Assembly (NCBI RefSeq): GCF_001194135.2
Contig: NC_068981.1
Location: forward strand, 97,842,139-97,905,260
Direction of reading: 5' to 3'
DNA: 63,122 nucleotides
DNA from: Octopus bimaculoides
Lineage: Eukaryota
The notes under the pieces are model-generated. The model saw nothing but the letters and a program-made list of their open reading frames with translations. It had not been told where the DNA came from and ran no database searches. The translations under genes and the position numbers were made by a program. Shown one piece after another: positions 23,896 to 62,241 of this stretch (within the stretch, counting starts at the first letter, position 1; the number at the start of each line of letters is the position of its first letter).

Positions 23896-23897
23896 TA

Positions 23898-24293
23898 GGC
23901 GTAGGAGTGGCTGTGTGATAAGTAGCTTGCTTACCAACCACATGGCTCTGGGTTCAATCCCATTGCGTGGCACCTTGGGCAAGTGTCTTCTACTATAGCC
24001 TCGGGCCAACCAAAGCCTTGTGAGTGGATTTGGTAGATGGAAACTGAAAGAAGCCCATTGTATATATATATATATGTATGTTTGTGTGTCTGTGTTTGTC
24101 CCCCCAACATCGCTTGACAACCAATGCTGGTGTGTTAACATCCCCTTAACTTAGCGGTTCAGAAAAGAGACCGATAGAATAAGTACTAGGCTTACAAAGA
24201 ATAAGTCCTGGGGTCGATTTGCTCGACTAAAGGCGGTGCTCCAGCATGGCTGCAGTCAAATGACTGAAACAAGTAAAAGAGTAAAAAGAGTAA
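23898..24293 (+). mobile_element. SINE family A, full length, young
   Basis: Close match to the 18041 and 55023 copies. Confidence 0.92.
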
Positions 24294-24592
24294 ATAGTCA
24301 CATTATCAAAATCTCAAAGCTACAAGATAATGCATGATTAATTCAAAGCAATGTTAATAAATAATCATAACATTTGACAGAATAATCTGAAGGCTAAAGG
24401 GTTCAAACAAGGACACATTAAACAATATACTTCCTGATGCACAAGGAGATGGGACGGTCATGGTTGGCAGAGCTTTAATCATAGGTAAGCTGGTTATCAT
24501 ATTGCCAAAGATGAGATTCCCCACTACATTCTATTCTTTGATTGGTTTCTGCCAGAGGCTGTAGCCATGCTGGGACACATGAATAATTTTGT

Positions 24593-25008
24593 CTTTTATC
24601 TTTTACTTGTTTCAGTCATTGGACAGCAGCCATGCTGGGGTATCACTCTCAAGGGTATTAGATGAACAAATCAACCACAGTACTTATTCTTTTATTCCTT
24701 TACTGGTATTCTGTTGGCCTCTTTTGTCAAACTGCTAATTTACTGGAACATAAACAAACCAATACCAGTTAACAAATGGTGAGGATGAAAAACATAGACA
24801 AAAAACACTCTCACATGCACACACATGCACAAATATATTATACAATAGGCTTCCACATAGTTTCTGTCGACCAAATTCTCTCATAAAGATTTGGTCGGCC
24901 TGGAGCTGTAGTAGAAGATACTTGCCCAAGGTGCCATGCAGTGGGACTGAACTCAGAACCATGCAGTTGGAAAGCAAACTTCTCAACCACATAGCCACAC
25001 CTGCACCT
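24593..25008 (-). mobile_element. SINE family A, diverged full length (extra head fragment about 25030-25160)
   Basis: Reverse-complement match to head and tail modules. Confidence 0.85.
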
Positions 25009-26662: not shown

Positions 26663-27580
26663 AAAGTGATGAGCTGGTGGAATTGCTAGCAGACTGAGCA
26701 AAATGCTTAGCAGCTTTTCATCCATCTTTACATTCTGAATTCAAATACCACTGAGGTCAACTTTGCAGTTCATCTTTTTGGGATTGATGAAATGAATAGC
26801 AGTTTAGCACTGGGGTTGATGTAGTCAACTTACTCCCACCCCTAAACTTGTTGGTCTTGTGCAAAAATTTGAAACCATTACTCTTTTACTCATTTACTTG
26901 TTTCAGGCATTTGACTGCGGTCATGCTGGGGCACCGCCTTTAGTCAAGCAAATCGACCCCAGGACTTATTCTTTGTAAGCCTAATACTTATTCTATCAGT
27001 CTCTTTTGCCAAACCACTTAGTTACGGGGATGCAAACACACCACCATCGGTTGTCAAGCGATGTTGGGCGGACAGACAGACACACACATATATATATATA
27101 CATATATACGACAGGCTTCTTTCAGTTTCCATCTTCCAAATCCACTCACAAGGCTTTGGTTGGCCTGAGGCTATAGTAGAAGACACTTGCCCAAGGTATC
27201 ACACAGTGGGAATGAACCCAGAACCATGTGGTTGATAAGCAAGCTACTTACCATACAGCCACTCATTATTATTATTATTATTATTAAAGCAACAAGCTGA
27301 CAAAATCATTAGCACACCAAACAAAATACTTAGTAGCATTTTGTCCATTTTGTTCATTCTGAGTTCAAAATCTGCAGAGGCTGACTTTACTTTTCATCCT
27401 TTCAGAATTGATGAAATAAGAACCAGTTGAGCACTGGGGTCAATGTCATCAACTAGTGCCCCCTCCTCAAAATTTCAAGCATTGTGCCTATAGTAAAAAG
27501 GATTAATATTATTAAGACAGCAAGCTGGTGGTATCATTAACCCTCAGACAAAACACTTAGTAGCATTTTTTTCCATCTTT
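26663..27580 (+). mobile_element. Chain of SINE family D copies (26663-26880, 27286-27512, head 27513-27580), interrupted by an A copy
   Basis: Each unit begins ttaa(a)g right after (ATT)n. Confidence 0.8.
26879..27264 (-). mobile_element. SINE family A, inserted in the (ATT)n tail of a family D SINE
   Basis: Flanks gaaaccatta| and |attattatt. Confidence 0.9.
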
Positions 27581-29032: not shown

Positions 29033-29200
29033 AGCTCTGCCAATGTGGTAAGAAGCTTGCTTCCCAATCACATGGTTCCAGGTTCATTCCCACTGTGTGG
29101 CACTTTGGGCAAGTGTCTTCTACTATAGCTTCAGGCCGACCAAAACCTTGTGAATGGATTTAGTAGACAGAAACTGAAAGAAGTCCATCATATATATATC
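29033..29200 (+). mobile_element. SINE family A head only, tandem to the next copy
   Basis: Head module ending in (TA)n. Confidence 0.85.
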
Positions 29201-29873
29201 TATAGCTGTGTGGTAAGAAGCTTGCTTCCACATCACATGGTTCCAGGTTCAGTCCCATTGTGTGTCACCTTGGGCAAGTGTCTTCTACTATAGCCTCAGG
29301 CCGACCAGGGCCTTGTGAGTGGATTTGGTAGATGGAAACTGTAAGAAACTCATTGTATATATATATATATATATCTTTTATTTTTTATCTTTTACTCGTT
29401 TCAGTAATTAGACTGTGGCCATGCTGGGGCACTGCCTTGAAGAAGTTTAGGCGAATTAATCAACCCCAGTACTCTTTTTTTTAAACCTGGTACCTATTCT
29501 ATTGATCCCTTTTAGTGAACCACTTTACAAGGATGTAAATACACCAACACTGGTTACCAAGTGGTGATAGGGAAACACACATAGACAAAAAGACACACAC
29601 ACACAGATATATATATATATATAAAATGGGCTTCTTTTAGTTTCCATCTATCAAATTCTCTCACAAGGCTTTGGTTGGACTGAGGCTATAGTAGAAGATG
29701 CTTGCCCAAGGTACCACACAGTGGGACTGAACCAAGAATCATGTATATATATATAAATATATATATGTATGCATGTGTGTGTGTCTTTCTTTCTGTGCTT
29801 GTCCCCCACCACTGTTTGACAACCAGTATAGGTTTGTTTATATCCCTGTAATTTGGTGTTTCAGCAAAAAGAA
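29201..29873 (+). mobile_element. SINE family A, split by a nested antisense A copy
   Basis: Head 29201-29355, (TA)n, insert 29375-29743, (TA)n, tail module 29770-29873. Confidence 0.82.
29375..29743 (-). mobile_element. SINE family A, nested in the (TA)n linker of another A copy
   Basis: Reverse-complement tail plus 5'-truncated head, with (TA)n on both sides. Confidence 0.85.
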
Positions 29874-35580: not shown

Positions 35581-35891
35581 TTCTATTTTTCAAGTTCTAT
35601 TTTTGCTTTATAGTAAAATGCATTTCAATTCTAAAAGCTTAATGCTAGCCCAGAAATGTACTTATTCATCATCTTTATCATCATTGCTGTTGTCATCATA
35701 TTGATAATGCCAGTGGTGATGATGATGATGATAGTCATGGAAAAAAATATTCACAAACAATATTAGTTAAATTTTTTTTTTGCATCTTTTAATCTTAGTT
35801 TCAGTTTACCCTTTTCCAAGTTTCATTCCTTCCTTAAATTTTTCATTCTCAAATGCAATAAACTTTCCATGGATATATTTTCTGATTGCAG

Positions 35892-35938
35892 GTTTTTGTT
35901 GACACCCCTGGACTTGTTACTTCGAAGAGCTTTTCAAA
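35892..35938 (+). CDS. ERAL1: ERAL1 internal exon with G3 motif: VFVDTPGLVTSKSFS(K)
   Basis: Acceptor ttttctgattgcag, donor gtaagt; 47 nt, phase 0/2. DTPG is the GTPase G3 box and continues the 13306 exon in frame. Confidence 0.94.
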
Positions 35939-38472: not shown

Positions 38473-38850
38473 CTATGTGGTAAAAAGCTTGCTTTCCAAC
38501 CACATGGTTCTGGGTTCAATCCAATTGCGTGGCACCTTGTACTATAGTCTCAGGCCAACAAAAGGTTTGTGAGTGAATTTGGTAGACAAACTGAAAGGAG
38601 CCTGTCGTGTGTGTGTGTGTGTGCGCGCGCGTGCCTGCCTTTGTTTGTCCTCCCATCACTGCTTCATGACCAGTGCTAGTGTGTTTACATCCCCATAACT
38701 TAGTTGTTTGGCAAAAGAGACTGATAGAATAAGTACTAGGCTTACAAAAATTAAGTCTTGAGGTCGATTATTCAACTAAAATCCTTCGTGGCAATGCTCC
38801 TACATGGCCACAGTCAAATGACTGAAACAAGTAAAAGAATAAAGGAATAA
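38473..38850 (+). mobile_element. SINE family A, diverged
   Basis: Head, (GT)n(GC)n linker, tail. Confidence 0.85.
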
Positions 38851-39300
38851 TTAACAGCAGAAAATGTATTTCATTTACATTTAGAAAATATTTAGTTTGT
38901 TAGTTATTCTTTAAGATTATATTGTTTCAGTTCTTGGACTGTGGTCATACTGGGACACTACCTTCAGAAGTTTTTGTTGGTTTAATTGTCTGCTACTTAT
39001 TTTATTGGCCTCGGGAGAAGAAGGACGGGCAAATATGTTGTATGGCTTTCTTTCACATGCAGTCTGAGGTTGAAGACTATTTTCTTGTTCTGTGCATTGG
39101 TTGTGTGTTTGTATTTTTGATGGAAACAAGATTATCATGTCCTCATTGGAGAATATATAGGAGATTTCTGTTCATGGTAGTATTGCCGGTTTGATGTGAG
39201 ATATCTAGGTTAAATGTGATTGACATCTGTATGGGGAAGGGTAGGAGAAAGGAAAGAATGGTATCACCTATATAAGAATTAGGTTTGCTTGAGGTGATGG

Positions 39301-40230: not shown

Positions 40231-43102
40231 CTGAGGTTATGGCAGAAGACACCTGTCCAAGGTGCCCTGCAGCAGGATAAAACCCAGAATTGTGATTGTG
40301 AAATGAAATTCTCAGCTACATTGCCATGTCTGCATCACTTATAACTTATTGTTGAGTAGATCTGGCCAGTTATAAGTTGACCTATGTCCCTGAAATAACC
40401 TGTATAATTCTAACACAACAACACAATTACATCCAGCACTCTGGATATGAACAGTGTCTGATGTGTCAGTGTGATTAGGTCTTGTAGCCATTTGTGCATA
40501 AGTTTAAAATGTGCCTGATGTGGGTGATGTAATGTTTGATACGTGTAAACATTTCACAAATGTAACCTTTGAAGTGTGTAAAATTTGTCAGGTACACAGT
40601 TTTACTTCTGTAATATTTGACAAAGATAATGCTAATGGTTCTGTTGATGTTAGCATGAGCGAGACAGGCAGACAGACAGAGAAAGAAAGATAAAAGTCTA
40701 CTATTATATAAAATTCCACTTCAGTCATTCCAAATGTGACATCCTCCCCCAAAATATTGAATATCATTCATGTCGAAATTTCCAGTAAAGTAAAATGTAA
40801 TGGCAGGTGTCTTGCATTCTCCACAGGGGAAGTCGTCAAGAAGCATACATGTGTGTGTGATAGTAAAGTGTGTGATATTTATGAAAAACGTTTCTTTTTA
40901 TTGGAATTATTTTGGATAATTTCAAGCCAAGAAACTTTAACTGAAGCTTTGATCTCTCCTGTAACTAGACATAATGGAAACAACAAGAGGGAGAATCAAC
41001 AACTGTCTGTTATTTTCACACAAAATAACTCTTGTCTCAAGTTCTTTCTGCTTTTATCTAATTATCATACTTCACTTATATAACAAAATAAAGGGTGCCA
41101 ATCCTAACTGAAATAATGGAACTTGCTAAGGAGACTTGAGCTTTTCAAATGGGTAATAATAGATAAAAATAAATAAAGAAAAGTAGTTTTAAAGTTCTGT
41201 AAAAAAAAAAAAAAAAGAAAACAGTCTTCTTTTAGACTTCTGGTAAGAAATACAAAAGTGGATTAAAAGAATAGATGATGATAATGAAAGGAGAAAACTG
41301 TTGCAAAGAAACAATTATGACAACTTTGACAATGGTAATTCAGCGTTCCATGTTGACACCTTGTATCAACCACAAACTATGTTCAGACTTTTGAAAGCAA
41401 CTTCTGATGAATAGCTTTGGCACATTTGCAGTGTAAAGAATAACTTCTTGGAATTGTCAATTTTCATGCTGATTCTTATCTCATGGACTGTTTATTCTTG
41501 CACTACTCCCACCCCTCCAGGGCAGGTTGTCTGACATAGGAAAGAGCTCAGCACAGATCCATATTTACACAGTTCAAACAATACTTTCTCTCTTTCTCTC
41601 TCTCTCTCTGTAACAAGGCCTGTCCACAAGATCTATTGTTTTTTTTTTGTGTGTGTTTTGTCTATTGAGGATAGCACCACCACCACCATCACAATCTCCA
41701 CCTCTATTCCTTTCATCAACTTTTAAACATATTTCCTGCCATTCCTCTCTATGACCATAGCCGCCTCAAACTGTCTCCATGTCACCATGCTCTCTATCTC
41801 TATCAGTTACATTTCTTTCTTCATAAACCATCTTAGTCATCTTCAACTTTTTCCACTACCATCTGCGGCTTTCACTGATTGGTTTTTCTGCAGCCTGGAA
41901 AGATTGTTCAGTTTCAAGATGTTAGTTATTATCACAAAATTACTGCAGATCAGACCAAAATATTCTGGAAACGTTGCCAATTCTACAACAGTAGTAGAAT
42001 ATTGTGGAGATATTGCCTGTTTTGCTCCATAGTATTTAAATAGGGTACCATTATGCTTAAAACTTTAACATTTTAAAATTGCTTCATATATGTCTTTACC
42101 TATTTTGGCTAAAACAAACATACATGTATACATGTGCATGATTATAAACCTAAGTGTGTGTATACATGTATGTATGTAAATATCTTTATATATCTTTGTG
42201 TGTGTGTGTGTGTGAGGTGAGTAAACTGAATATCTATTTCCTCTTGAGAAATTCAATTTAACTTGGTGCACCCTTGTGTCTTGCTTGGAGCAGTTGACCT
42301 GGAAATGAAATAACAGAAACTTGAAGTCATATTAAGTTTTTTTAAACTTAAAATGTTCACATGTGTAAGCATACATACATAGATACATACATACATACAG
42401 ACAGACCGACAGACACCATGTGCAGTCTGATTTTTAGAATAGGTACACTATCCCTGTGTGTTGCAAGAGGTAACTAAAAGTTTGATATCATGAAAAGCAT
42501 CTGGCCATAAAACAGTGCTTCAAAAATTCCCATCCAACCCATGCTAACATGGAAAAGTGTAAGTAAAAAAAAAACTTGATGATATCATCACCATCACCTT
42601 TTACAGTTGCTTTCCATGCTGGCATGGGTTGGATGATCATGACAGTTTGAATAATCTATTATTGGGAATCACTGCTCCTATACACTAGTGTTTGTTATGT
42701 GTCATTCATTTTCGTTTCTATGTCTGAATGCACTTCCTAGTACAAACCACTTTAAAGAGTAATACTAGATGCATTTTTTTCATGGCACAGCACTTGAAAG
42801 ATTGAAAAGTCCTCGGTGAGGCAGGACTATAAGAACCTCACAGTCCTATGCTTTCTCTGTTCATTTGACAACCACATGTATACAGAGCATATTTCTCATG
42901 GCACCAGTACAGGTAGAGGAGGAAAGTTACCTTGTACACAGAGAATATAGAGCATAGTCAATAATCTGTGTAAACCAATGAAGAAGGACACAGAGAGAGG
43001 GGGATGTAGGGAGAGAGTGAAAGAGGGAGAGAGTAATAACAGCCTCACAGTCAGAATAGGGTGAGGAAAATATGAGTGTTAGTGTAGAGAATACTTAAAA
43101 AT

Positions 43103-44523
43103 TTAAGGGTTACTTACATAAAAGCCAATATAAATACTAAGATCAGGAGGGTGGAACGCTTTAAGAAAGGGATAATAAAGTAATTACTAAAATCATTTTA
43201 AATAATATTGCCATATTGTATAAAGTTAAAATTTAGGGTTATTTAGATTATTAAGAATAATATTATAACAAAAAGATGAAATTTCTTTGAGTACTTTTGA
43301 GTATATGCCAAATTTTACCACATTAGAGGGAGGAAAAGAAACTACATAGAAATAGTTTAATATTTATATATAATATATACTTAAATATTAACTTATTAGA
43401 TGGTATCTATGGAGATTGATCAGTTGGCATTTACTGGTATTTAATAAAGGAGCACTGAGGTGAAAAAACATGTTGAACTATATATTAATTAAATTATAGT
43501 CTAAGCAGTTTATTTTAAGTTGTGAAGATACCGGTATTGTTTTATATAAGCTAAAAATAGAATTTGTAGGGGTACAAAAATTAGGTCTATTTCATAAAGA
43601 AATTTTATCCTTTTTTGTTATAATATTCTTCTTAATAATCTTCTTGTTAACCCTAAATTTTAACTTTATACAATATGGCAATATTGTTTAAAATGGTTTT
43701 AGTAATTACTTTATTTATCCCTTTCTTGAAGTGTTCCACCCTCCTGATCATAGTATTTCTAAGGGCCTTTATTTAAGTACCCCTAAGAAACTATATCATG
43801 TATGGATTAACACTAATAACTTTTAAAACCTATAATATACCTCTTAGTTTATAATTAGTATATAATTAGAATGTCCTATAACATCAATATTCCTTTAGCT
43901 AATACCAGGTATCAGTCTTTATTGATACAAGCTAAATAAGTAAATAAACAATTTTTAGTTTAAAATACTTAAATTATTATACATTTTCTATAAATCTTCT
44001 CTATTGATGTTAATGAAGTATATATACTTTATCATGGTTTTAGTGATTTAGCTATTTTATTCTTTTTCTGTGGTGTTCTGCTCTACCTAATCATTTTATT
44101 ATTTTATAATAGCCTTTATTTATGAAATAAACCTAATTTTTTGTACCCCTATAAATTCATACTTAGCTTATATAAAACAAGACCGCTATCTTCACAACTT
44201 AAAATAAACTGCTTAGATTATAATTTAATTAATATACAGTTAGCATGTTCTTTTGCCTCAGTACTCCTTTATTAAATACCAGTAAATACCAATGATCAAT
44301 CTTCACAGATACCATCTAATAAGTTAGCATTTAAGTATATGATATATATAAATATTAAACTATTTCTATGTAATTTCTTTTCCTCCCTCTATTGTGGTAA
44401 AATTTGGTGTATACTCAAAAGTATTCAAAAAAATTTTATCCTTTTGTTATAATATAATTCTTAATAATCTTCTGAATAACACTAAATTTTAACTTTATAC
44501 AATATGGCAATATTGTTTAAAAT
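43103..44523. repeat. Unclassified AT-rich block: inverted partial copy plus 831-bp permuted tandem unit
   Basis: 43195-43598 is the reverse complement of 44119-44523; 43103-43288 is the reverse complement of 43596-43790; aattttatcc recurs at 43601 and 44432. Confidence 0.9.
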
Positions 44524-45121
44524 ATTTAACTATAGTGCCCCATGATAAAATTTCCCCTGTATCATTATCAATGGTCGACTAGTGGCTTGCCCCTTTAATT
44601 GTCAGCTAACATCTTGATTTAAGATTTCCTTTACCAAATCTCATTATATTGCTTCAAATTAATCTTGATACTTTAATGACTATACCCACTATGATTTCTA
44701 TCGACTCCCTCAGCCCCCTTCCTAACAGACACTGCTCGTTGTTCTTTAGCCTTAGATTTTGATGTACAAAGATTTAATAAACAAGACTATAAATTAAAAC
44801 TGACCCCAGAAAACAGTAACAAGCTAGATCTCTAACAAGTCTTTCTTCCTGATACCTTAGTAGCTTCTAAGCTGAAGTGAAAACAGCATGCTCTTTGTCT
44901 GTCTCCTTACCTTCTTGGAGGGTTTAGGTAAAATTATACTAATGTGTCCATCTGCTTTAATTTAATTCAATTCTATGTCTTTATGCAGCTGAGGATTGCT
45001 CTGTTAAATTGATGTAGTGGTTACATTGTTCAATTAAATGGAGTTGCTTGAAACGATCATATTGCATTACTTCTGGATATACTTGTTGCTTATTTTGGTT
45101 TTATATATATGTATGTGTGTG

Positions 45122-45196
<75 letters not shown>

Positions 45197-45211
45197 ATAT
45201 ATATATGTGTA

Positions 45212-45266
<55 letters not shown>

Positions 45267-45990
45267 GTTTGTGTATATAGATGTGTGTATGTTTGTAAAC
45301 CAAGTGATTAGGTGATGAATTAAGTCTACCATCCATGTAGGTTATAGCAGGATTTGAACTCAGAATGCAAAGAGTTAGAACAAATACTGCAAGGTATCCT
45401 AATTGTTTCTACCTGTCTACTCCCTTAGACATCATTTATCAACCCCACAAGAATGAAAGGCAAAATTGATGTTGCTCTTCTTCAAAGCAGCATTTAATTG
45501 GTCTTGGAACAACTTTGGTCCTTCAGCCAGGTGTTGATGTGGCTGTAGAGGATTTTACTGGTGAGACATGAGTCAGATATGTGAACTATATTCCATGTGT
45601 AGTGTGAATTTAATGTTACTGGTGTTGGTTTATTGAGTATTTCTATGTTACCAGATAACTAAAAGGACCTTCTGGTGATACAGGATGTTTAAGGCTTTGT
45701 GATTCAGCTATATGCGCTCCATGTCCATTATTGATACAAGAGAATGGAAACACAGACTGTTTGGTTGGAAGGGGATTCAGTGTAGCAGCAAAATGAATTA
45801 CTTATAAATATTCTTTCAGATCCTTCTGAAAAATACAGAGGTCTGGCTAATGTGGTTTAATGTCTGTTTGCAAGAAGTTATTATAATATATTATGATAGC
45901 CTACTGGCTTGCCAGTCCTCAATCAAACCGTCGAACCCATGCCAGCATGGAAAGCGGATGTTAAACAATGATGATGATGATGATAATACT

Positions 45991-54342: not shown

Positions 54343-56090
54343 CATCACCACCACCACCACCACCACCATCAAAACCTTCATCCCTGCCATTATTATCACA
54401 CCACTAAACAACAGTAACAACAGCACTGACTCACCCATCACCAACACCACATTGCTACCACCACCAATAGCTATACTACAACCACCACTATCAGCAACAC
54501 CACTACCACCACCACCACCACCACCACCACCAACATCAGCACTACCATCTCTAACAACAGCACTCATCACCAACAATACCACCACAACAAGCCAACGACT
54601 TGCTTGAAATAGCAGCCAGTGTAGTCCTCTACTCACTGTTTCAGAATAATAGATAAGTGGGCCCAGCTGGAGTGTCTTTAATCTTGGATCTGCTTGATCA
54701 GAGTTGACCTGGGGCTAAACAGTGCTAACTACAACAACAACAGTGTCATCATTAACAAATACTTACTGTCACTGCCACACAAAAAAAATAAATAAATGAA
54801 TATATAAAAAATAGCAATCACCAACGAAAGAATCTACTGCTTCAACAACATCAATAACACAACACTATGGAAGACCACAACCATACAGCACTATCAGGGA
54901 CCAACAACAACACTATCAATGATATAGTATTATCAATGACTACAGTCATATAGCACTTTCAAGGACCACAATCATACTTATTGCATCAAAGACCATAACA
55001 CAATATTATCAACAATATCAACAGCACAGGAGTGGCTGTGTGGTAAGTAGCTTGCTTACCAACCACATGGTTCCGGGTTCATTCCCACTGCGTGGCACCT
55101 TGGGCAAGTGTCTTCTACTATAGCCTCGGGCCGACCAAAGCCTTGTGAGTGGATTTGGTAGACGGAAACTGAAAGAAGCCCGTCGTATATATGTATATAT
55201 ATATATATATGTATGCGTGTGTATATGTTTGTGTGTCTGTGTTTGTCCCCCCAACATCGCTTGACAACCGATGCTGGTGTGTTTACGTCTCCGTAACCTA
55301 GTGGTTCGGCAAAAGAGACTGATAGAATAAGTACTAGGCTTCCAAAGAATAAGTCCTGGGGGTCGATTTGCTCGACTAAAAGGCGGTGCTCCAGCATGGC
55401 CACAGCCAAGTGACTGAAACAAGTAAAAGAGTAAAAGAGCACCAGCAACGATCATAAACCATACAATGCTACACTATCAACAACACAGCAACAGAATGCC
55501 TTCAGTGATATCGACAATACAACACTATTAATGATATCAGCTCAACACTATCACTGACATTAACAGCACTAGCAATGGTCAGAACTATACAACACTATCA
55601 GCAACACAACAACACTATCAATGATATCAATGATACCTCCTCGTCTTCGTCATCCTTTAACATCTGTTTTCCCTGCTAGCATAGATCGGACAGCTTGACC
55701 AGAGTTGGCAAGCTGGAGCGCTGCACCAGATTCCAGTCTGTTTCTACAGCTGGATGCCCTTCCTAATGACAATCACTATCAATGACTACAACCATACAGT
55801 TCTATGAAGACAGAACATCATCAGTGATATCATTAACACAACTCTATCAACACTATCAAAGACCATAACACAATACTATTAAAGGCCAAAATACTATGAA
55901 AGACACAACACTGTCAAGAACCTCAACCATACAACACTATCAAACAATAGAACAACAACACTATCAGTGATATCAACACTATTGTCAACAGGAACAAAAA
56001 GACAACATTCGGCAACATCAACAATACATCATTATCAATGACACTAACAATACATGATTAACAACACCAGCTTCACAACACTGTCAGAGG
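54343..56090 (+). repeat. (CAC)n tract, then degenerate (ACAACACTATCA)-like cryptic minisatellite interrupted by SINEs
   Basis: acactatca recurs many times from 54830 to 56050. Confidence 0.8.
55023..55439 (+). mobile_element. SINE family A, full length, young
   Basis: Retains most CpGs; (GTAAAAGA)n tail. Confidence 0.92.
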
Positions 56091-62179: not shown

Positions 62180-62241
62180 ACACAACATTGACAGGAATAT
62201 GATTACTGACCCTGAAAATTGTATTCAAGCAGTTAATATGA
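62180..62241 (+). CDS. ERAL1: ERAL1 internal exon: (K)HNIDRNMITDPENCIQAVNM
   Basis: Acceptor ctttttttcag, donor gtaagt; 62 nt, phase 2/1, compatible with the preceding exon. Resembles ERAL1 [21 protein letters not shown] (H...DP pattern). Confidence 0.88.

What the first reader, a model, noticed from the sequence alone, without database searches (positions are those of the whole stretch)
43103..44523. AT-rich fold-back of an 831-bp circularly permuted unit with RIP-like, transition-dominated divergence
Seen: with segments A (44119-44431), B (43598-43693, repeated at 44432-44523), C (43694-43790) and D (43790-44118), the locus reads rc(C)-rc(B)-rc(A) | B-C-D-A-B. That is 1.1 head-to-tail copies of an 831-bp unit plus an inverted 0.6 copy, joined at an aaa microhomology near 43596. 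The block has no microsatellites. It is roughly 17-23% GC in the lines I counted, clearly below its surroundings, with only three CpGs that I found. Of about 20 substitutions I aligned between the A copies, most are transitions: two classic CpG decays (tg/ca) and several CpA/TpA or TpG/TpA pairs. Established: a partial tandem plus inverted repeat is how Penelope-like elements and rolling-circle or template-switch products appear; duplicate-specific C-to-T erosion is known as RIP in fungi, not animals. Inference: a circular or concatemeric template integrated here, and the repeat may then have undergone non-CpG deamination. I could not recover a protein in any frame. In ERAL1 pre-mRNA it would fold into a hairpin of about 400 bp.
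Basis: partly seen in the sequence, partly recalled or inferred. Interest (0 to 1): 0.78.

Follow-up and report, generated by a model that had tools for sequence, protein, structure and literature searches.

The report
Rearranged AT-rich repeat copy in intron
The fold-back is real, but it is a one-off head-to-head arrangement of pieces of an ordinary, naturally AT-rich repeat that exists in tens to hundreds of copies per genome, and its mutations show no RIP-like C-to-T erosion.

Summary
The described structure is in the sequence. An inverted arm rc(A-B-C) at 43104-43602 abuts B-C-D-A-B at 43596-44527. The arms are 88-92% identical, GC is 23.9%, and there are three CpGs. Independent sequencing runs support the left edge and the inversion junction with error-free contigs at single-copy depth.

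The unit is not a locus-specific oddity. It belongs to a non-coding repeat family of roughly 40-600 copies per genome, found in four related organisms. Other copies carry every adjacency (A-B, B-C, C-D, D-A) and also B-E into 44524 onward. The "circular permutation" is therefore a property of the family. Only the inversion junction is unique to this locus.

The transition excess is the genome's norm: 25:8 in the A+B arms against 652:241 in other repeats of the window (p=0.84). The other two pairs have more transversions. When substitutions are polarised against the family's majority letters, 13 of 16 transitions run A:T to G:C, the opposite of RIP.

The best explanation is an inverted fragment made when the element inserted (twin-priming or Penelope-like), followed by neutral divergence. 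Interest is low.

The parts
43104..43602 (-). Inverted arm: an internal fragment of the repeat family, read on the minus strand as A-B-C. Its outer (left) end abuts single-copy DNA.
   Evidence: BLASTN pairs. Depth jumps from 35.5 (single copy) to 1500-13000 at 43104, and a 0-mismatch contig spans 42609-43147.
43596..43602 (.). Inversion junction. Seven bases (AAAGAAA) are shared by both alignments.
   Evidence: Only one contig spans it at 82% likeness or better, at single-copy depth with 0 mismatches. All other copies run on into rc(D) or come from the end of A.
43596..43694 (+). B1, first direct copy of the roughly 96-nt segment B.
   Evidence: Depth is about 8000-17000.
43694..43790 (+). 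C, the least abundant segment of the unit (depth about 700-2400).
43790..44118 (+). D, present once at this locus but high-copy in the genome.
   Evidence: A 0-mismatch contig at single-copy depth covers 44019-44118.
44115..44431 (+). A, the direct copy that pairs with 43288-43602.
44427..44527 (+). B2, second direct copy of B.
44524..45084 (+). E plus a very abundant terminal segment. It is colinear with B in other genomic copies, and copy number rises to the right.
   Evidence: Contigs such as 44456-44615 and 44442-44560 cross from B into E with 7-10% mismatches. Loose ends at 43195 read rc(E start). Depth is 9k-34k, then 130k-540k.
45102..45297 (.). (TA)n/(TG)n microsatellite at the right end of the repeated stretch.
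35889..35938 (+). Upstream exon of the ERAL1-like host gene (VFVDTPGLVTSKSFSK).
62180..62241 (+). Downstream exon. The intron 35939-62179 contains the block.
   Evidence: The loose end of the spliced RNA reads matches 62180 exactly.

Best explanation
The block is one rearranged copy of a non-coding, intrinsically AT-rich interspersed repeat. The family has roughly 40-600 copies per genome and is shared by at least four related organisms. The copy sits in a 26-kb intron of an ERAL1-like gene.

The direct part (B-C-D-A-B, continuing into E and a very abundant terminal segment) is colinear with the family. The apparent 831-bp circular permutation is therefore inherited from the family's own internal or head-to-tail repeat organisation.

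The inverted arm (A-B-C) is an internal fragment joined head-to-head at a junction that exists only at this locus. I infer that it formed during insertion, by a second priming event or template switch in target-primed reverse transcription. This would be twin-priming-like, or the tandem/inverted insertion mode of Penelope-like elements.

After that, the copies diverged about 8-9% by ordinary neutral mutation. No duplicate-specific deamination is involved. The only likely consequence is a long intronic dsRNA stem.

What is shown: the structure, the junctions, the high copy number, the family adjacencies, the uniqueness of the junction, the substitution spectrum and the intron context. What is inferred: the retrotransposition mechanism and its timing.
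For: - Structure.
- High copy number in organisms A-D, against a single-copy depth of about 35.
- The adjacencies A-B, B-C, C-D, D-A and B-E occur in other copies: pieces, joints and loose ends.
- The junction is unique to this locus.
- The left arm is an internal fragment that ends sharply against unique DNA at 43104. Twin priming and Penelope-like insertion both predict this; an independent 5'-truncated insertion does not.
- Copy number rises to the right, from about 40-600 to 250-970 to 3700-8100 copies. That is the pattern expected of 5'-truncated retroposons with the 3' end on the right.
- A (TA)n/(TG)n array lies at the right end.
- The three B copies are about equally distant from one another, which suggests they arose at about the same time.
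- Only one derived letter is shared by both arms (44346), so there was little time between insertion and duplication.
- There is no ORF and no Pfam domain in six frames, so the element is non-autonomous.
- The published description of Penelope-like insertions (a partial tandem plus an adjacent inverted 5'-truncated copy, with a bias toward microsatellites) is in PMC8557442. Twin priming is described in PMC2837659.
Against: - No target-site duplication of 8 nt or more was found between the left flank and any candidate right end.
- The family's true termini, orientation and class are unknown, because no other copy could be retrieved.
- Under twin priming from one RNA, the inverted and direct parts would overlap by about 185 nt (B-C). 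That is larger than the small deletions or duplications usually described.
- No hammerhead ribozyme, RT or endonuclease is present.
- About half of the differences between the arms fall at sites where both letters may exist in the family. The arms could therefore descend from different source copies.
- Colinearity of 43630-44650 is not confirmed by long reads.
Confidence: 0.5

Rival explanations
1. Rearrangement at the DNA level after insertion. A colinear 5'-truncated copy (A0-B1-C-D-A-B2-E) later underwent a replication template switch (fold-back, FoSTeS/MMBIR type). This inverted A0 and made an inverted duplicate of B1-C, with the join at the A-rich microhomology.
For: - A0-B1-C would supply the contiguous A-B-C template that the left arm needs.
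- A 4-7 nt overlap lies at the junction.
- No TSD was found.
- The junction is unique to this locus.
- All duplicate pairs show similar divergence of 8-9%.
Against: - The microhomology is A-rich in 76% A+T DNA, so it is weak evidence.
- Only one derived letter is shared by both arms. The event would therefore have followed insertion almost at once.
- This model needs two events where the insertion-time model needs one.
Confidence: 0.25
2. Two independent family members inserted next to each other in opposite orientation, with later deletion of the outer part of the left copy.
For: - The family has many copies.
- About half of the arm differences are not private to one arm.
- The three B copies are star-like.
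Against: - The left arm is an internal fragment with no family 3' part beyond C, and it meets unique DNA sharply.
- Both copies would have to break exactly at the A-start / B-start point.
- At tens to hundreds of copies in a genome whose contigs total about 2.3 Gb, chance adjacency is very unlikely.
Confidence: 0.1
3. A RIP-like, duplicate-triggered C-to-T (non-CpG) deamination eroded the repeat.
For: - The block has the lowest GC in the window.
- TpA/ApT is 1.16 and (CpA+TpG)/(ApC+GpT) is 0.89, against window medians of 0.86 and 1.31.
- The A+B arms differ by 25 transitions and 8 transversions.
Against: - The transition:transversion ratio matches other repeats in the window (652:241; Fisher p=0.84). 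It is lower in the other two pairs.
- Polarised against the family majority letters there are 13 A:T-to-G:C and 3 G:C-to-A:T transitions. The per-site ratio is 0.74, against 2.5 in control repeats of the same gene.
- The second RIP index lies inside the mononucleotide-shuffle range, and the first lies only just outside it.
- AT-richness is shared by all family copies in four organisms, and single-copy segment D is equally AT-rich.
Confidence: 0.02
4. The fold-back is the normal form of a foldback or long-TIR DNA transposon, or part of a homogeneous 831-bp satellite, or an assembly artefact.
For: - The arms are long and inverted.
- The assembly is short-read based and rich in gaps (4631 N in the window).
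- Penelope-like structures are known to confuse short-read assemblies (PMC8557442).
Against: - No other genomic copy carries the junction, so it is not a family TIR.
- Depth varies more than tenfold along the unit, and B-E adjacency is common, so it is not a uniform satellite.
- The left edge and the junction are confirmed by independent runs with error-free contigs at single-copy depth.
Confidence: 0.08

Closest known systems
Penelope-like element insertions (pseudo-LTR partial tandem plus an adjacent inverted 5'-truncated copy), including non-autonomous derivatives
   Same: The layout matches the published description (PMC8557442). There is an inverted partial copy head-to-head with a partial tandem, a short direct repeat (B) frames the unit, a microsatellite is nearby, and the host appears to be an invertebrate.
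   Different: There is no RT or GIY-YIG coding capacity and no hammerhead ribozyme. B is followed by E in many other copies, so B is not simply the element's 3' end. The microsatellite lies about 580 nt from B2 rather than at the junction. The family's termini are unknown.
LINE twin priming (5' inversion of a 5'-truncated non-LTR retrotransposon copy)
   Same: An inverted internal fragment abuts the 5' end of a direct copy that runs on toward the abundant 3' part. The internal junction has short microhomology. Copy number rises toward the right end.
   Different: No TSD was found and there is no poly(A). The inverted and direct parts overlap by about 185 nt rather than showing a small deletion or duplication. 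Membership of the family in non-LTR retrotransposons is unproven.
Repeat-induced point mutation (RIP) of ascomycete fungi
   Same: The sequence is AT-rich, CpG-poor and duplicated, and the differences in one pair of arms are mostly transitions.
   Different: The direction of change is mostly A:T to G:C. The spectrum equals that of other repeats. The composition is family-wide rather than duplicate-specific. The host is an animal.
Replication-based inverted duplications (fold-back / FoSTeS-MMBIR)
   Same: The join is head-to-head at a microhomology, and an inverted duplicate lies next to its template.
   Different: It requires an unobserved colinear precursor, and nothing here distinguishes it from an insertion-time event.

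Membership tests
RIP-like duplicate-specific deamination | Differences between duplicates are dominated by C-to-T / G-to-A changes, more than in other sequence of the same genome | tested here: not met
   The ratios are 25:8 (A+B arms), 6:10 (B+C arms) and 2:5 (B/B), against 652:241 in other repeat pairs. Fisher p=0.84. Polarised transitions are 13 A:T-to-G:C against 3 G:C-to-A:T.
RIP-like duplicate-specific deamination | A dinucleotide signature (high TpA/ApT, low (CpA+TpG)/(ApC+GpT)) beyond what base composition explains | tested here: inconclusive
   The values are 1.16 and 0.89. Mononucleotide shuffles give 0.91-1.10 and 0.84-1.19. There is a slight TpA excess only.
RIP-like duplicate-specific deamination | The erosion is confined to duplicated sequence at the locus | tested here: not met
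   Segment D, single-copy at this locus, is as AT-rich as the rest. The family majority letters in four organisms are as A/T-rich or more so.
Twin-primed non-LTR retrotransposon insertion | An inverted 5' fragment and a direct 3' fragment of the same element, joined internally | tested here: met
   The junction is unique to this locus, and both parts belong to one family.
Twin-primed non-LTR retrotransposon insertion | Target-site duplications flank the composite | tested here: inconclusive
   No shared k-mer of 8 nt or more links 43070-43112 and 44500-45450. The true 3' end is undefined, and the copies are about 8% diverged.
Twin-primed non-LTR retrotransposon insertion | The family is a non-LTR retrotransposon or its SINE-like dependant (3'-anchored, 5'-truncated copies) | tested here: inconclusive
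   Copy number rises toward the right end. No coding sequence is present, and no other copy could be retrieved.
Penelope-like elements | An ORF with a PLE-type reverse transcriptase and a GIY-YIG endonuclease | tested here: not met
   There is no Pfam hit in six frames of 43103-45100. The longest stop-free stretch is 63 aa. A non-autonomous derivative remains possible.
Penelope-like elements | A partial tandem (pseudo-LTR) with an adjacent inverted 5'-truncated copy | tested here: met
   compared with the description in PMC8557442. This is a resemblance of form only.
Penelope-like elements | A hammerhead ribozyme in the pseudo-LTR (canonical clades) | tested here: not met
   There was no Rfam hit at the gathering threshold over the window, nor at E up to 10 over 42600-45100. 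The Naiad clade also lacks it.
Foldback / long-TIR DNA transposon | The inverted arrangement is shared by the family's other copies | tested here: not met
   Only the locus's own contig spans the junction.
Satellite DNA with 831-bp monomer | Homogeneous head-to-tail arrays with even representation of the whole monomer | tested here: not met
   Depth differs more than tenfold between B and C. B is often followed by E instead of C.
NUMT | Mitochondrial genes, rRNA or tRNA content, and low copy number | tested here: not met
   There are no Pfam domains and no Rfam family. The family has tens to hundreds of copies. It was not compared directly with a mitochondrial genome.
Helitron / rolling-circle element | 5'-TC ... 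CTRR-3' termini with a 3' hairpin, insertion between A and T, and a Rep/helicase in autonomous copies | not tested
   The family's termini could not be defined without other full copies.

The most novel reading that the evidence does not exclude
Relative to the family's majority letters, private changes in the block are A-to-G on the genomic + strand 11 times and T-to-C twice (p=0.010). This holds in both arms even though the arms have opposite element orientation. The + strand is the sense strand of the ERAL1-like gene, whose intron RNA would form a duplex of about 410 bp. A control repeat family in the same gene shows no such bias (47:46).

The most novel reading not excluded is that a long intronic dsRNA, a natural ADAR substrate, leaves a sense-strand A-to-G footprint in the DNA itself, for instance through RNA-templated repair.

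The signal is small. It drops to 8:2 if two TG/CA sites descend from a CpG-bearing subfamily. It also rests on majority letters from short contigs.
Probability: 0.03. Interest if true: 0.8.

Novelty: new member of a known kind. Interest (0 to 1): 0.15.

Why it matters
It matters little beyond annotation. The locus is one more transposable-element copy carrying an inversion that probably arose at insertion. The RIP-in-animals idea, which carried the finding's interest, is not supported.

There are two practical points. First, the repeat should be masked as a family that extends to about 45084, not treated as a locus-specific 831-bp unit. Second, the ERAL1-like intron contains a near-perfect inverted repeat of about 410 bp. 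It could form dsRNA and be edited or processed, and it could make the locus prone to rearrangement or mis-assembly.

Tried and rejected
**Retrieving other copies of the family**
- Exact-pattern scans of metagenome contigs (twice), viral contigs and prokaryote genome contigs found nothing.
- A protein-database search with a concatenation of the seven longest stop-free translations found nothing.
- A family consensus, termini and TSDs could therefore not be obtained.

**Long reads**
- No PacBio or Nanopore runs were listed.

**Identifying the organism**
- A 42-aa ERAL1 exon query found no homologue.
- An exact look-up of the piggyBac-like ORF was not on record.
- The taxon remains unverified. 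The SINE-like consensus resembles, from my memory only, the microsatellite-containing SINE of Octopus genomes.

Those 38 bases of the left arm were therefore never assayed.

**Hypotheses tested and dropped**
- Hammerhead ribozyme or any other Rfam family: none found.
- Protein domains: none found.
- Selection for the RNA hairpin: transitions between the arms give 14 G-U wobbles against 11 A-C mismatches in + strand RNA, which is no bias (one search list; p=0.69).
- Transcription-associated mutational asymmetry as the cause of the A-to-G excess: not supported by the control repeats in the same gene.
- The apparent element boundary at 45003/45004 is only a 3-nt indel relative to other copies (loose ends).
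- Presence of the locus in organisms B-D: no junction contig was seen and the left flank is only partly covered. This is inconclusive, because contigs show presence and not absence.

Full report
**1. The observation**

A self-BLASTN of 43001-44700 against the window gives three repeat pairs:
- an inverted pair 43190-43602 / 44115-44527 (417 columns, 90.2% identity);
- an inverted pair 43106-43288 / 43596-43784 (189 columns, 88.4%);
- a direct pair 43596-43694 / 44427-44523 (99 columns, 90.9%; spacing 829-831 nt).

The block is the most AT-rich stretch of the window, at 23.9% GC against 35.8% overall, and it has exactly three CpGs. It contains no real microsatellite. The two alignments overlap by seven bases (AAAGAAA, 43596-43602). 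There is thus a short microhomology, but in 76% A+T sequence it carries little weight.

**2. Read support**

Contigs from independent public runs of the same organism support two junctions.
- A 539-nt contig with no mismatch, at single-copy depth 35.5, crosses the left edge (42609-43147).
- Contigs with no mismatch, at depth 33.7 and 20.9 in two different runs, cross the inversion junction (43526-43620 and 43526-43630).

No long-read run was listed. The order of the segments between about 43630 and 44650 therefore rests on the assembly alone. Each adjacency in that stretch also exists elsewhere in the genome, so a chimeric assembly cannot be fully excluded.

**3. The unit belongs to a repeat family**

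Against a single-copy depth of about 35, the block has word depths of about 1,300-21,000 in organism A. Values are similar in three other organisms. That is roughly 40-600 copies at 90% similarity or more.

The left edge of the repeat is sharp at 43104. The right edge is not at 44523, because depth keeps rising. It is 9,000-34,000 over 44524-44900 and 130,000-540,000 over 44905-45070.

Other genomic copies cross from B into the sequence after 44523, here called E. Examples are contigs 44456-44615 and 44442-44560. Loose ends at 43195 read as the reverse complement of the start of E. Other copies also carry the adjacencies B-C, C-D, D-A and A-B (pieces and joints).

The 'circularly permuted 831-bp unit' is therefore how the family itself is organised. 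It may be an internal repeat, or head-to-tail units that end in A-B-E. It need not be the trace of a circular template integrated at this locus.

Depth is uneven along the unit (B about ten times C), so the family is not a homogeneous satellite. There is no ORF longer than 63 codons, no Pfam domain in six frames of 43103-45100, and no Rfam family, hammerhead ribozymes included.

**4. The inversion is private to this locus**

I laid four runs on 43545-43655 at 82% likeness or better.
- Only the locus's own error-free contig at single-copy depth spans the junction.
- Every other contig that matches the left arm stops at 43599-43603 and runs on into letters that are the reverse complement of the end of D.
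- Every contig that matches B starts at 43596-43613 and is preceded by the end of A.

The canonical order is therefore D-A-B, and the head-to-head join is a single event. This rules out a foldback or long-TIR transposon whose normal form is the hairpin.

**5. The substitution spectrum**

Counts for the three pairs:

| Pair | Transitions | Transversions |
|---|---|---|
| A+B arms | 25 | 8 |
| B+C arms | 6 | 10 |
| B versus B | 2 | 5 |
| All other repeat pairs in the window at 80% identity or more | 652 | 241 |

The A+B arms do not differ from this background (Fisher p=0.84). The block as a whole has, if anything, fewer transitions (p=0.03).

I polarised the changes against the majority letter of the family's other copies, using the 'other letters' tables. 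This gave 24 confident private changes: 16 transitions and 8 transversions. Of the transitions, 13 run A:T to G:C and only 3 run G:C to A:T.

Per site, the G:C-to-A:T rate is 0.74 times the A:T-to-G:C rate in the block. In 13 copies of a control SINE-like family in the same gene the ratio is 2.5.

At one of them a minor CG variant exists, so CpG decay from a CG-bearing subfamily is possible there.

The RIP indices are TpA/ApT 1.16 and (CpA+TpG)/(ApC+GpT) 0.89. Both stand out from the flanks. However, they sit at or near what base composition alone predicts: 0.91-1.10 and 0.84-1.19 in shuffles. It is the flanks that deviate, through the usual TpA depletion and CpG decay.

The AT-richness is intrinsic to the family. 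This locus has been drifting toward the genome's higher GC, not away from it. The RIP-like inference is not supported.

**6. Gene context and hairpin**

Three exons on the + strand, with canonical splice sites, were identified:
- about 13303-13383 (SSKVHTTRKNTLGVLTENSNQI);
- 35889-35938 (VFVDTPGLVTSKSFSK);
- 62180-62241 (HNIDRNMITDPENCIQAVNM).

Three RNA-seq reads cover the second exon and continue with 30 letters that match 62180 exactly. The 62-residue concatenation matches human 'GTPase Era, mitochondrial' best (8csp, E=1.2e-9) and also Pfam MMR_HSR1.

The + strand RNA of 43103-44530 folds into a nearly continuous stem of about 410 bp (-586 kcal/mol). Transitions between the arms give 14 G-U wobbles and 11 A-C mismatches in that RNA, so nothing suggests the stem is under selection.

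**7. Mechanism**

The left arm is an internal fragment (A-B-C). It ends against unique DNA, and its inner end is joined to the 5' end of a direct copy that runs on toward the most abundant, presumably 3'-terminal, part of the family.

That is the form produced when a second priming event or template switch occurs during target-primed reverse transcription.
- Twin priming of LINE-like elements is described in PMC2837659.
- Penelope-like elements are described as forming 'partial tandems' preceded by 'an inverted 5'-truncated copy', often at microsatellites (PMC8557442).

Three observations fit a structure formed at or very near insertion. The three B copies are about equally distant from each other. 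The two arms share only one derived letter. All duplicate pairs are 8-9% diverged.

Four observations count against it. I found no target-site duplication. The family's class and termini are unknown. The 185-nt overlap between the inverted and direct parts is large for twin priming. None of the coding or ribozyme hallmarks of Penelope-like elements is present.

The main rival is a later replication template switch acting on a colinear copy A-B-C-D-A-B-E, and present data cannot exclude it. Two independent insertions, a family-wide foldback element, a satellite, a NUMT and RIP are each disfavoured, as set out in the rival explanations and the membership tests.

**8. An unexplained detail**

Eleven of the private transitions are A-to-G on the genomic + strand and two are T-to-C (p=0.010). 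This holds in both arms despite their opposite element orientation.

The control family in the same gene shows 47:46, so ordinary transcription-associated asymmetry does not explain it. The count falls to 8:2 if the TG/CA sites descend from a CG subfamily. It also rests on majority letters from short contigs that drop rare variants. I treat it as a weak lead and not as a finding.

**9. Verdict**

The RIP-like part is not supported.

This is a rearranged copy of an ordinary AT-rich non-autonomous repeat. It is a known kind of thing, and its interest is low.

Noticed in passing
window 43104-44527 (both arms): Private changes relative to the family majority are A-to-G on the + strand 11 times and T-to-C twice (p=0.010), in both arms despite their opposite orientation. 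A control repeat family in the same gene shows 47:46. The ratio weakens to 8:2 if two TG/CA sites come from a CG subfamily.
   Followed up: partly
window 52-292, 7637-7868, 10587-10763, 18040-18475, 20094-20357, 23897-24296, 24592-25003, 26877-27264, 29044-29744, 38473-38853, 55024-55438: A SINE-like family of about 430 bp with an internal (TA/TG)n microsatellite has at least 13 copies in the window, at 66-90% identity. From memory only, its consensus resembles the abundant SINE of Octopus genomes. The organism was not verified.
   Followed up: partly
window 42531-42635: A short palindromic element (ccatccaacccatgctaacatggaaaag ... ctttccatgctggcatgggttggatg). Its right half has word depth 385,000-466,000 in organism A, roughly 11,000-13,000 copies. 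It is often preceded by (ATC)n in other copies.
   Followed up: no
window 44905-45084 and 45102-45297: A segment with depth 130,000-540,000 (thousands of copies) lies directly upstream of a (TA)n/(TG)n array. It may be a 3' tail shared by a LINE/SINE pair. The apparent boundary at 45003/45004 is only a 3-nt indel.
   Followed up: partly
window 42656-43103: The flank left of the repeat is single-copy in organism A. In organisms B-D it is only patchily found at 90% similarity or better: 42784-42879 is present, while 42880-42975 and 43072-43103 are absent. By contrast, 42400-42635 is present in organism C with 6 mismatches and 3 gaps. This could be a lineage-specific indel or a gap in the contigs.
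   Followed up: no
window 3439-3942 (+): This ORF matches the N-terminal part of the piggyBac-type transposase domain DDE_Tnp_1_7 (E=5e-11). It is a transposon remnant or a domesticated copy.
   Followed up: partly
window 13303-13383, 35889-35938, 62180-62241 (+): The exons of the ERAL1-like gene are separated by introns of about 22.5 kb and 26.2 kb that are packed with repeats, microsatellites and assembly gaps (4631 N in 11 gaps). CpG observed/expected is only 0.22 across the window.
   Followed up: partly
window 44240-44262 joined to about 43637 in other copies: Some family copies in organisms A, C and D carry an internal deletion variant that joins mid-A to mid-B. This is seen in the loose ends 'AAATTTGTTCTTTCACCTCAATGATA' and the joint 44233->43648.
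   Followed up: no
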